Shown piece by piece: positions 54,116 to 55,086 of a stretch of DNA of 64,000 nt. The position numbers and the translations under genes are program-made. The DNA lies in the NCBI RefSeq assembly GCF_011386835.1, contig NC_088809.1, positions 7,874,001 to 7,938,000 of the forward strand, in the 5' to 3' direction. Under the pieces are notes generated by a model. It saw only the letters and a list, made by a program, of their open reading frames with translations. It was not told the DNA's origin and searched no databases. The DNA is from Chrysemys picta bellii (lineage: Eukaryota). Position 1 is the first letter of the stretch. Every line of letters starts with the position of its first letter.

Positions 54116-55086
54116 CCTGCTTGCACCTTGCAGCTGCAGTTCCAACCCTGGCCAAGACCCATTAGGCCAAAGCAGCATATAAAAATTAATAAAATTAATT
54201 TTAAAAATTTTATTAAAAATTAATAAAATCAAAGTAAATTCTCAGTGTCTGAGAACCCCAAGGAGCGGTTTGATTTTGTGCTGGGTGTAAAAATGGGCAA
54301 AGGGTTGGGCTGGTGGTGGAGTGGTGTAAAAGCAAAAAAAAACTAACAGGAAGGGAATTGCAATGCATAACAGTTCGTTAGCAAAAGTCAAGCTAACTGT
54401 AACCCTAATAACGCAAAATCTGTAAAAGCAAAAATTATGTAAGGCAAGTAAAAAAAAACTGTGTAAAAAGTTGTTGCAACCTTGTGTAAATAATGTGTAA
54501 ATAATATTGCATATAAACTAAAGTCTAAACAAGCAAAAAAAAACCAAAATATCAAAATAACCTATGTATAAACAAAATGCAGCTGTTGCTCATTCTTGTC
54601 TGTAACAAAAGGTATAAATGCTTGCTGTAATTGTTTACCTGTTGAAAAACCGTTTGGCTCTCTCCCTCTACGCAATTGCTTAAAAAAATTAAGTATCTAA
54701 CATGCTGTACCCAAACAAAAAGTAAAAACTTTGTTATTCTCCAACAGTGGTTTGGATTTTTCCAGCCCTCCTTAAACAAGGCTAAACTTGGCATTCAGGA
54801 TGGGCACAAACCCAAACCCTGTGTGTGGATACCACTGAACTTGGAGACAGCTGGGATTTGGATCCAAACTCTGTGGCCCGTATAGGGCCCCGAACCAGCA
54901 GAGCCCATACACGGCTAGTTCAATGGTAAACACTTGAATAGTCCCCTTGATTTTAGTGGAATTGCTTGTGTTTGGCTCCTCTTCTGGATCAGAAATACGC
55001 ACGCCAGCCTTGGGGAAGGTCTGATCCAAACCTTGCAGCTCAGGCCCATCGCATCTTCTTACAGGGAAGGAAAGAATTTATGCTCA

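What the first reader, a model, noticed from the sequence alone, without database searches (positions are those of the whole stretch)
54160..54755. Strand-specific GA-depleted tract in intron 3: APOBEC-like TC hypermutation footprint or assembly artefact
By manual count, 54357-54754 has about 56 G residues but only one is followed by A (54644), although A is roughly 45-50% of bases. The complementary dinucleotide TC occurs about 15 times on the same strand, and the surviving Gs are almost all GT or GC. Words such as gctaactgtaaccctaataacgc and tgtgtaaataatgtgtaaataat read like ordinary DNA (gctgactgtgaccctgatgacgc) after GA-to-AA conversion. 54160-54250 also lacks GA, and a G-rich island at about 54250-54325 is spared. 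This equals clustered C-to-T at TpC on the minus strand, which is the HNF1B non-template strand, the signature of TC-preferring AID/APOBEC deaminases on single-stranded DNA. It could come from an edited retro-insert, a kataegis-like germline event or a transcription bubble. No retroelement or TSD is recognisable. A low-coverage consensus error is the main alternative.
Basis: partly seen in the sequence, partly recalled or inferred. Interest (0 to 1): 0.75.

Follow-up and report, generated by a model that had tools for sequence, protein, structure and literature searches.

The report
G-to-A hypermutated retroelement insert in turtle HNF1B
The odd A-rich stretch is a 420-base mobile-element insertion, probably a lone retroviral LTR, that entered an HNF1B intron in the ancestor of pond turtles carrying the mark of a host DNA-editing (APOBEC-type) antiviral enzyme; the process is well known in mammals and birds, but I found no report of it in turtles.

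Summary
In window 54357-54754 only 1 of 56 G is followed by A, where about 23 are expected. The depletion covers G before any purine, not GA alone.

- **Scope of the bias:** G is 9 of 139 purines-before-purine in the insert, against 230 of 462 in the rest of the intron (P = 4e-23). G before pyrimidines is unchanged (50 of 101 against 156 of 327).
- **It is an insertion:** Orthologous HNF1B intron 3 from 13 other turtle assemblies shows the tract is exactly a 420-bp insert (54326-54745). It is flanked by a perfect 6-bp target-site duplication, AGTGGT.
- **Distribution:** The insert is present in all five emydid genomes. It is absent, with one AGTGGT at the empty site, in Platysternon. It is also absent, with the flanks abutting, in Pangshura, six sea-turtle assemblies and Carettochelys.
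- **Timing:** All emydid copies share the depletion. Later substitutions show no G-to-A bias.

This rejects assembly artefact, kataegis on resident DNA and a transcription bubble.

Best reading, at about 0.7: a retroelement, probably a solo LTR with TG...CA ends. Its minus-strand cDNA was deaminated at YC to near saturation (about 50-60 G-to-A changes) before or during integration on the emydid stem.

No unedited parent copy could be found, so the G-to-A direction is inferred rather than shown. This is a new member of a known kind and of moderate interest.

The parts
54320..54325 (.). Left copy of the target-site duplication, AGTGGT
   Evidence: The Platysternon empty site reads ...GGTGGTGGAGTGGTTCGGATTTTT... 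with one AGTGGT. The window has AGTGGT on both sides of the insert. In one search the two BLAST segments overlap by 6 nt on L014.
54326..54745 (+). 420-bp insertion with G-before-purine depletion on the + strand. It is presumably a retroelement with its sense strand on +, probably a solo LTR. If the duplication is read as GTGG, the element is 54325-54746 with TG...CA ends.
   Evidence: Present in the window and in L001-L004. Absent, with flanks abutting, in L006-L014 other than the transcript L005. The insert has GA 3, GG 6 and GY 50. Equally long flanks have GA 24/26, GG 42/35 and GY 41/43. Fisher P = 3.7e-23.
54746..54751 (.). Right copy of the target-site duplication, AGTGGT
54359..54745 (+). 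Core of the depletion: 387 nt with GA 1 and GG 3 against GY 48
   Evidence: The single GA (54644) is G only in this genome and A in the four other emydid copies.
54348..54357 (+). Purine run AGGAAGGGAA holding 5 of the 9 surviving G-before-purine sites. It is spared from conversion and may be a polypurine-tract-like segment.
   Evidence: Positions listed. The run is invariant in all five emydid copies: one search lists no variable column there. The reason for the sparing is not resolved.
54334..54342 (+). A-run inside the insert whose length varies among emydid assemblies, from 9 to about 28 A
   Evidence: Alignments.

Best explanation
Window 54326-54745 is a retroelement insertion, most likely a solo LTR of a low-copy endogenous retrovirus or LTR retrotransposon. 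It lies with its sense strand on the window + strand, antisense to HNF1B. It integrated into HNF1B intron 3 on the stem lineage of Emydidae.

During reverse transcription its minus-strand cDNA was single-stranded. A host AID/APOBEC-type cytidine deaminase converted nearly every C preceded by a pyrimidine (5'-YC) to U. After second-strand synthesis this reads on the + strand as G-before-purine changed to A-before-purine, roughly 50-60 changes. The edited copy was integrated, fixed and inherited by all emydids.

Shown here: the tract is an insertion with a target-site duplication, its phylogenetic distribution, the coincidence of the bias with the insert, the bias being context-specific and one-stranded, and the absence of any continuing bias.

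Inferred: that the A residues were once G, that the agent was a deaminase acting on cDNA, and the element class (LTR at roughly 50%).
For: (1) Context-specific, one-strand bias. G is 9/139 of purines before a purine, against 230/462 in the rest of intron 3 (odds ratio 0.07, P = 3.7e-23). G is 50/101 of purines before a pyrimidine, against 156/327 (P = 0.82). The purine/pyrimidine skeleton, which transitions cannot change, is normal: mean purine run 2.19 against 2.22. On the same strand, C after Y and C after R do not differ (P = 0.36).

(2) The surplus of AA (99 against 34.6 at the window rate) matches the combined deficit of GA, GG and AG.

(3) The product/substrate ratio (AA+AG)/(GA+GG), the measure used for APOBEC3-edited HIV in PMC1635257, is 14.4 in the insert and 1.0 in the flanks. 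In 300-nt windows it reaches 20-60. The 99.9th percentile of 57,684 windows across the window and 13 turtle loci is 4.6, and the only windows above 7 are the five orthologous copies.

(4) It is an insertion. It is absent from Platysternon, Pangshura, six sea-turtle assemblies and Carettochelys, with the flanks abutting and, in Platysternon, a single AGTGGT at the empty site. It is present in five emydid genomes with AGTGGT duplicated.

(5) The bias stops at the insert boundaries.

(6) All emydid copies share the depletion. Later substitutions are AG 5, CT 4, AC 4 and AT 2 in 413 sites, so this was one old burst.

(7) Read with a 4-bp duplication, the element has TG...CA ends. Its 8-nt termini are inverted copies apart from one transversion and two A-for-G differences, both at G-before-purine positions.

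(8) It is not a member of an abundant SINE or LINE family. G-to-A-tolerant alignment finds nothing above shuffles, while the same search with a SINE edited in silico does find relatives.

(9) Literature: G-to-A edited and 'ultra-edited' LTR elements are known in mammals and birds (PMC4866542) and in lizard L1 (PMC3880073). In vitro, preferred CC and TC targets exceed 90% conversion on long incubation (PMC1635257). Turtles are reported to carry APOBEC1, and reptiles carry APOBEC5 (bioRxiv 10.64898/2025.12.03.692250; 10.1101/2025.05.21.655229).
Against: - No unedited parent or sister copy was found, so no substitution is directly seen as G-to-A.
[quoted passage not shown] Near-saturation in an LTR therefore needs a very high enzyme dose or a different kind of element.
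- Conversion of about 87-93% of sites is at the extreme of what is reported in vivo.
- The TG...CA reading needs a 4-bp duplication, yet 6 bp are duplicated, so the LTR call is not secure. No AATAAA signal is present, and the TATAAA words could be products of the A-richness.
- TGY, and especially TGTA, is over-represented and CAY under-represented. Editing does not explain this, so the element also has a peculiar native composition.
- A run of five unconverted sites (54348-54357) needs a special explanation.
Confidence: 0.7

Rival explanations
1. Native composition. The insert comes from an unknown mobile element or other source whose sequence is naturally A-rich and lacks G before purines. 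No editing took place.
For: No parent copy is available to show G-to-A. The tract has other native oddities: TGTA is 6.5x and CAY 0.3x the window rate.
Against: No known sequence class avoids G only when the next base is a purine while keeping a normal G share (50%) before pyrimidines and a normal purine/pyrimidine skeleton. The tract is not repetitive, so 130 of 139 sites are independent. A-rich tails decaying by A-to-G changes would create GA, not remove it. The ratio is unique among 57,684 windows of turtle DNA.
Confidence: 0.12
2. Editing in place. The element integrated unedited. It was then deaminated on one strand within the chromosome on the emydid stem, either on single-stranded DNA during integration or gap repair, or by a defence aimed at newly inserted DNA.
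For: The timing cannot be separated from integration. The change lies between the split from Platysternon and the emydid crown. The bias is confined to the insert.
Against: A chromosomal process would have no reason to stop exactly at the duplication on both sides while sparing G-rich flanks 1-30 nt away, where the left flank has GG 42 and GA 24. No such process is known in vertebrates. cDNA editing explains the same facts with a known mechanism.
Confidence: 0.06
3. The same cDNA editing, but the insert is a non-LTR retroposon or retrocopy made by target-primed reverse transcription, not a solo LTR.
For: A 6-bp perfect duplication fits endonuclease-staggered cuts as well as integrase. First-strand cDNA in target-primed reverse transcription is exposed as single-stranded DNA. 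Edited L1 copies exist in a lizard (PMC3880073).
Against: There is no poly(A) or microsatellite tail at the 3' (right) end: the insert ends ...GTTATTCTCCAAC. It has no similarity to the abundant CR1 or SINE families represented in about 250-400 kb of turtle DNA, although the search method detects such families. The TG...CA ends and TGT/ACA inverted termini favour an LTR.
Confidence: 0.1
4. Assembly or consensus artefact, or kataegis or transcription-bubble deamination of resident intron DNA.
For: None remains after comparison with other genomes.
Against: Four independent emydid assemblies carry the same tract at 95-98% identity. The affected DNA is an insertion that is absent from four outgroup lineages. 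The surrounding intron is unaffected. Surviving G are not in CpG context, so bisulfite-like conversion is also excluded.
Confidence: 0.01

Closest known systems
APOBEC-edited ('ultra-edited') LTR retrotransposons and ERVs of mammals and birds (Knisbacher and Levanon 2015, PMC4866542; Carmi et al. 2011 as cited there)
   Same: A fixed genomic retroelement copy with a dense, strand-specific, context-dependent loss of G in favour of A. It lies in an intron and is confined to the element. The estimated 50-60 changes far exceed that paper's threshold of 25 for 'ultra-edited'.
   Different: The host is a turtle, which has no APOBEC3. That screen detected edited elements in only 3 of 15 non-mammalian vertebrates, and its text names no turtle. 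Here the editing is inferred from composition and the empty site, not from alignment to an unedited parent. Both GA and GG are removed, almost to completion.
APOBEC3F/G hypermutation of HIV-1 minus-strand cDNA (Suspene et al. 2006, PMC1635257)
   Same: TC and CC on the minus strand are targeted, seen as GA and GG on the plus strand, while GT and GC are spared. The (AA+AG)/(GA+GG) ratio rises. Polypurine tracts held in RNA:DNA hybrid are mostly protected in vitro. More than 90% of preferred sites can be converted at saturation.
   Different: In that study the ratio in vivo rarely exceeded 2; here it is 14 overall. Their model predicts light editing of LTRs. The enzyme here cannot be an APOBEC3.
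G-to-A edited L1 elements in the green anole and the DNA-mutator activity of lizard APOBEC1 (Lindic et al. 2013, PMC3880073)
   Same: A non-avian reptile, no APOBEC3, and G-to-A clusters in retroelements.
   Different: In the anole, editing was seen in L1 (0.26% of copies) but not in LTR, CR1 or L2 elements. The present element looks like an LTR and is far more heavily converted.
GY-context G-to-A hypermutation of opossum gammaretroviral ERVs (APOBEC5 preprint, 10.1101/2025.05.21.655229)
   Same: A deaminase footprint on ERVs in a host that lacks APOBEC3. According to that preprint, APOBEC5 homologues occur in reptiles.
   Different: The context is the opposite. The opossum footprint is GY-to-AY, while here GY is untouched and GR is removed.
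Kataegis (clustered strand-coordinated APOBEC mutations in chromosomal DNA)
   Same: A strand-coordinated cluster at YC.
   Different: Kataegis affects resident DNA and only a minority of sites over kilobases. Here the cluster is bounded by an insertion's target-site duplication and is near saturation.

Membership tests
APOBEC-type edited retroelement | Excess of G-to-A mismatches relative to an unedited parent or family consensus, with C-to-T on the same strand as control | not testable with these tools
   No parent copy was found in the window or in 13 turtle loci, and there was no access to whole turtle genomes or a repeat library. Indirect control: on the + strand, C after Y and C after R do not differ (P = 0.36).
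APOBEC-type edited retroelement | Dinucleotide context preference of the changes | tested here: met
   G is 6% of purines before a purine but 50% of purines before a pyrimidine (P = 1.2e-14 within the insert). Both GA and GG are depleted.
APOBEC-type edited retroelement | The footprint is confined to a retrotransposed insert and the flanks are unaffected | tested here: met
   The insert has GR 9, against 66 and 61 in equally long flanks. Boundaries are set by empty sites in four outgroup lineages and by the 6-bp duplication.
APOBEC-type edited retroelement | The host encodes a DNA-editing AID/APOBEC deaminase | not tested
   Literature only. APOBEC1 is reported in turtles (10.64898/2025.12.03.692250, citing Krishnan et al. 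2018) and APOBEC5 in reptiles (10.1101/2025.05.21.655229). The genes were not examined here.
Solo LTR of an ERV or LTR retrotransposon | Target-site duplication of 4-6 bp | tested here: met
   AGTGGT at 54320-54325 and 54746-54751, with a single copy at the Platysternon empty site.
Solo LTR of an ERV or LTR retrotransposon | 5'-TG...CA-3' termini with short inverted repeats | tested here: inconclusive
   This is met only if the duplication is read as 4 bp (GTGG), giving element 54325-54746 with ends TGT...ACA. With the full 6-bp duplication the ends are GT...AC.
Solo LTR of an ERV or LTR retrotransposon | Homologous copies flanking gag-pol(-env) elsewhere in the genome | not testable with these tools
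   No turtle whole-genome search was available.
Solo LTR of an ERV or LTR retrotransposon | Promoter (TATA) and polyadenylation signal in sense orientation | tested here: inconclusive
   TATAAA occurs at 54512, 54567 and 54613 on the + strand and never on the - strand. There is no AATAAA or ATTAAA. In a sequence that is 43% A these words carry little weight.
Kataegis or transcription-associated deamination of resident DNA | The mutated DNA is pre-existing chromosomal sequence at that locus | tested here: not met
   The tract is absent from the orthologous intron of Platysternon, Pangshura, sea turtles and Carettochelys.
Non-LTR (target-primed) retroposon | 3' poly(A) or family-specific microsatellite tail next to the duplication | tested here: not met
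   The right end is ...CTTTGTTATTCTCCAAC followed directly by AGTGGT. The only A-run lies near the left end.

The most novel reading that the evidence does not exclude
The conversion happened in the chromosome, on the newly integrated element only. That would be a vertebrate germ-line process that recognises freshly inserted DNA and deaminates one strand to saturation, functionally like fungal repeat-induced point mutation, rather than editing of cDNA before integration. The data only place the event between integration and the emydid crown and show that it respects the insert boundaries, so they do not strictly exclude this.
Probability: 0.04. Interest if true: 0.85.

Novelty: new member of a known kind. 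Interest (0 to 1): 0.4.

Why it matters
Deaminase editing of retroelements is well documented in placental mammals (APOBEC3) and songbirds, weakly in one lizard, and not at all in turtles in the literature I could search.

This insert is a clean, datable example, sitting between the Emydidae-Platysternon split and the emydid crown. It suggests that a turtle-lineage enzyme without APOBEC3 ancestry (APOBEC1- or APOBEC5-like) could convert about 90% of TC and CC sites in a retroelement. It also gives that enzyme's apparent context: pyrimidine at -1, with GGY sites partly spared.

The finding supplies a simple search key, the (AA+AG)/(GA+GG) ratio with a well-populated GY class. A genome-wide scan of turtle assemblies with this key would test whether such restriction was common.

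For HNF1B itself, the element is an old intronic passenger that is fixed across emydids. Nothing here suggests a regulatory role.

Tried and rejected
- **Tandem or internal repeats as the cause:** TRF, the repeat finder and self-alignment against shuffles show the tract is not repetitive.
- **Unedited parent in the window or fetched loci:** Plain blastn, G/A-collapsed blastn, and Smith-Waterman scoring subject-G/query-A as a match under two scoring schemes gave nothing above shuffles. A positive control with a SINE edited in silico worked.
- **Degenerate (R for A) patterns from the tract:** 0 hits in metagenome contigs (two scans) and viral contigs.
- **Rfam on intron 3:** nothing.
- **Exact look-ups of ORFs** in the tract and over exons 3 and 4: not on record.
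- **Exon-4 ORF searches:** these found ORFs on contigs of other vertebrates, but none shared the intron-derived flanks. That route to orthologues failed. The route that worked used full-length HNF1B ids.
- **Emydura isoform X2 look-up:** not on record.
- **Earlier scan notes by words and by sequence:** blank.
- **Bisulfite-like conversion:** rejected because surviving G are mostly in TG and AG context, not CG.
- **Plus-strand YC editing:** rejected. The lower YC count comes from fewer pyrimidine-pyrimidine steps and generally lower C, not from a context effect.

- HNF1B exons were searched singly by reference.
- No contig taken for human was fetched, saved or compared. Mammal-like or human-named protein hits (P0122, P0125, P0189) were not looked up.
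- No de-edited, consensus or ancestral version of the insert was built.

Full report
**1. The observation**

Window 54357-54754 (+ strand) holds A163 T113 C66 G56. About 23 GA are expected from composition. None of 20,000 shuffles had fewer than 10, and the binomial P is 6e-12.

In 400-nt windows the GA observed/expected ratio is 0.08, against a first percentile of 0.41 for the whole 64 kb. The 289-nt GA-free run 54355-54644 is the longest gap for any of 12 dinucleotides tested.

The tract is not a tandem or dispersed internal repeat. TRF and the repeat finder give only a 23-nt two-copy repeat. The best self-alignment scores 29, against 25.8 +/- 4.3 for dinucleotide shuffles. Its G residues are therefore independent observations.

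**2. What the bias really is**

It is not GA alone. GG is also nearly absent, at 4 against about 24 at the window rate, and AA is in surplus by about the summed deficit of GA, GG and AG. The cleanest description:

- Among purines followed by a pyrimidine, G is 50% (rest of window 46%).
- Among purines followed by a purine, G is 4% (rest of window 43%).

Purine-run length, which transitions cannot alter, is normal at 2.19 against 2.22. On the same strand, C after a pyrimidine is no more depleted than C after a purine (P = 0.36). One strand only, at 5'-YC on the complementary strand, carries the signature.

**3. Where it sits**

HNF1B lies on the minus strand. The exons were found by short motifs and fixed by a Mauremys transcript (L005):

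- exon 2 at about 60870-61040
- exon 3 at about 55574-55839
- exon 4 at about 53359-53601

Intron 3 is about 2 kb and the tract lies in its middle.

**4. Orthologues**

Exact look-ups of local ORFs were blank. A representative search and a word search with the exon-4 ORF found only other vertebrates.

A lungfish full-length HNF1B (P0012) then served as query. It led to a 55-member turtle cluster, whose annotated loci could be fetched with their introns.

*Emydids.* All 2.6 kb around the tract align end to end at 95-98% in four emydid assemblies:

- L001, GCA_013100865.1, Trachemys
- L002, GCA_027887155.1
- L003, GCA_028017835.1
- L004, GCA_002925995.2, Terrapene

The tract is therefore real and fixed, not an assembly error. 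The window is closest to L001 and L002. This fits the painted turtle named in earlier notes of this scan.

*Outgroups.* The flanks align but about 54321-54747 is missing, with the two flanks abutting, in:

- six sea-turtle assemblies (L006-L011)
- Carettochelys (L012)
- Pangshura (L013)
- Platysternon (L014)

**5. The junction**

The Platysternon empty site reads ...GGTGGTGG AGTGGT TCGGATTTTT.... The window reads ...GGTGGTGG AGTGGT [420 bp] AGTGGT TTGGATTTTT....

This is a perfect 6-bp target-site duplication (54320-54325 and 54746-54751) around an insert at 54326-54745.

Platysternon is generally placed as sister to Emydidae, and Geoemydidae, Chelonioidea and Trionychia as successive outgroups (my knowledge of turtle phylogeny). 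One insertion on the emydid stem therefore explains the pattern. The alternative needs four or more precise deletions that each leave one copy of the duplication.

They are not part of the phenomenon.

**6. The bias matches the insert exactly**

| Region | GA | GG | GY |
|---|---|---|---|
| Insert | 3 | 6 | 50 |
| 426 nt to the left | 24 | 42 | 41 |
| 425 nt to the right | 26 | 35 | 43 |

Against the rest of intron 3, the G share before purines is 9/139 against 230/462 (P = 3.7e-23). Before pyrimidines it is 50/101 against 156/327 (P = 0.82).

From the 139 purine-purine steps and a normal G share, 60-69 G-before-purine sites are expected and 9 are seen. That implies about 50-60 conversions.

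The product/substrate ratio used for APOBEC3-edited HIV (PMC1635257) is 14.4 for the insert and 1.0 for the flanks. In a scan of 57,684 windows of 300 nt, on both strands of the window and the 13 genomic turtle loci, the 99.9th percentile is 4.6. The only values above 7 (8.5-60) are the five orthologous copies of this insert.

**7. Timing**

All five emydid copies have GA 2-3, GG 6 and GY 48-50. The lone GA at 54644 is G only in this genome and A in the other four.

Substitutions among the copies are AG 5, CT 4, AC 4 and AT 2 in 413 sites (3.6%). The flanking intron shows 5.7-5.9%. The depletion was therefore complete before the emydid crown, and nothing similar has happened since.

**8. What the element is**

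- **Termini:** If the duplication is read as GTGG, the element (54325-54746) begins TGT and ends ACA. Its first and last 8 nt are inverted copies apart from one transversion and two A-for-G differences, both at G-before-purine positions. These are LTR-like termini and a small internal hint of G-to-A.
- **No tail:** There is no 3' tail, which argues against a LINE, SINE or retrocopy.
- **Not an abundant family:** G-to-A-tolerant alignment against the window and six loci finds no relative above shuffles. The neighbouring MIR-like SINE, converted in silico in the same way, still finds its relatives (98 and 70 against 45-57). The insert therefore does not belong to an abundant family.

A solo LTR of a low-copy ERV or LTR element is the best guess, at roughly 50%.

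**9. Mechanism**

The pattern matches what an ssDNA-specific cytidine deaminase with a -1 pyrimidine preference leaves on minus-strand cDNA:

- TC and CC are targets, while AC and GC are spared.
- The change reads as G-to-A on the sense strand.
- It is confined to the reverse-transcribed DNA.

Such footprints are established for APOBEC3 on HIV (PMC1635257) and for LTR elements of mammals and birds, including 'ultra-edited' copies with at least 25 changes (PMC4866542). They are also known for L1 in the anole (PMC3880073).

Turtles lack APOBEC3. APOBEC1 is reported in turtles and APOBEC5 in reptiles (10.64898/2025.12.03.692250; 10.1101/2025.05.21.655229). I did not examine these genes.

The opossum ERV footprint discussed alongside APOBEC5 is GY, the opposite context. 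This footprint therefore does not simply match that one.

**10. What does not fit**

- No parent copy was found, so the direction of change is inferred.
- The kinetic model predicts light editing of LTRs (PMC1635257), yet here about 87% of sites are converted, or about 93% outside one run.
- That run, AGGAAGGGAA (54348-54357), is invariant in all copies and holds five of the nine surviving sites. In vitro, PPT RNA:DNA hybrids are mostly protected from APOBEC3G (PMC1635257), so an RNase-H-resistant purine run is a plausible but untested reason.
- TGY and TGTA are over-represented and CAY under-represented, which is a native peculiarity of the element.
- The remaining GG sites are all GGY, hinting at a +2 effect.

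**11. Verdict**

Artefact, kataegis and transcription bubble are rejected.

This is a new member of a known kind. The literature I could search holds no turtle example.

**Limits I observed**

- I built no de-edited, consensus or ancestral version of the element.
- No contig taken for human was fetched or compared. Mammal-like and human-named protein hits were left alone.

Noticed in passing
L014 (GCA_003942145.1, Platysternon megacephalum); protein P0307 = TFK12857.1: The source names this 558-aa protein 'origin recognition complex subunit 3'. It sits in the turtle HNF1B 90% cluster and its locus aligns to HNF1B intron 3, so the name is an annotation mislabel.
   Followed up: partly
window 54334-54342: The A-run inside the insert is a length-variable microsatellite among emydid assemblies: 9 A here and about 28 A in L001.
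   Followed up: partly
L012 about 24372-25122, corresponding to window about 54170-54270: Carettochelys has about 750 bp where the window has about 100 bp of AT-rich simple sequence. This is a separate lineage-specific insertion in the same intron.
   Followed up: no
window 53940-54140: A MIR-like SINE on the + strand just left of the AT-rich stretch. Other copies are present in the window.
   Followed up: partly
window 54752: T here, but C in Platysternon, Pangshura, L001-L004 and the sea turtles L006, L007 and L010 (GTGGTTCGGA in the emydids, Platysternon and Pangshura): a CpG-to-TpG change private to this genome, right next to the duplication.
   Followed up: yes
window 53274-53678 (-), exon 4: The exon-4 peptide is 98% identical to HNF1B of the gecko Sphaerodactylus townsendi (P0001). 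That is closer than to the bird-like ORFs in the library, which reflects how conserved this exon is in reptiles.
   Followed up: no
L009 about 38876-39175 (- strand): The second-highest product/substrate ratio outside the insert (6.7). It probably reflects AT-rich simple sequence shared with L006 and L007.
   Followed up: no
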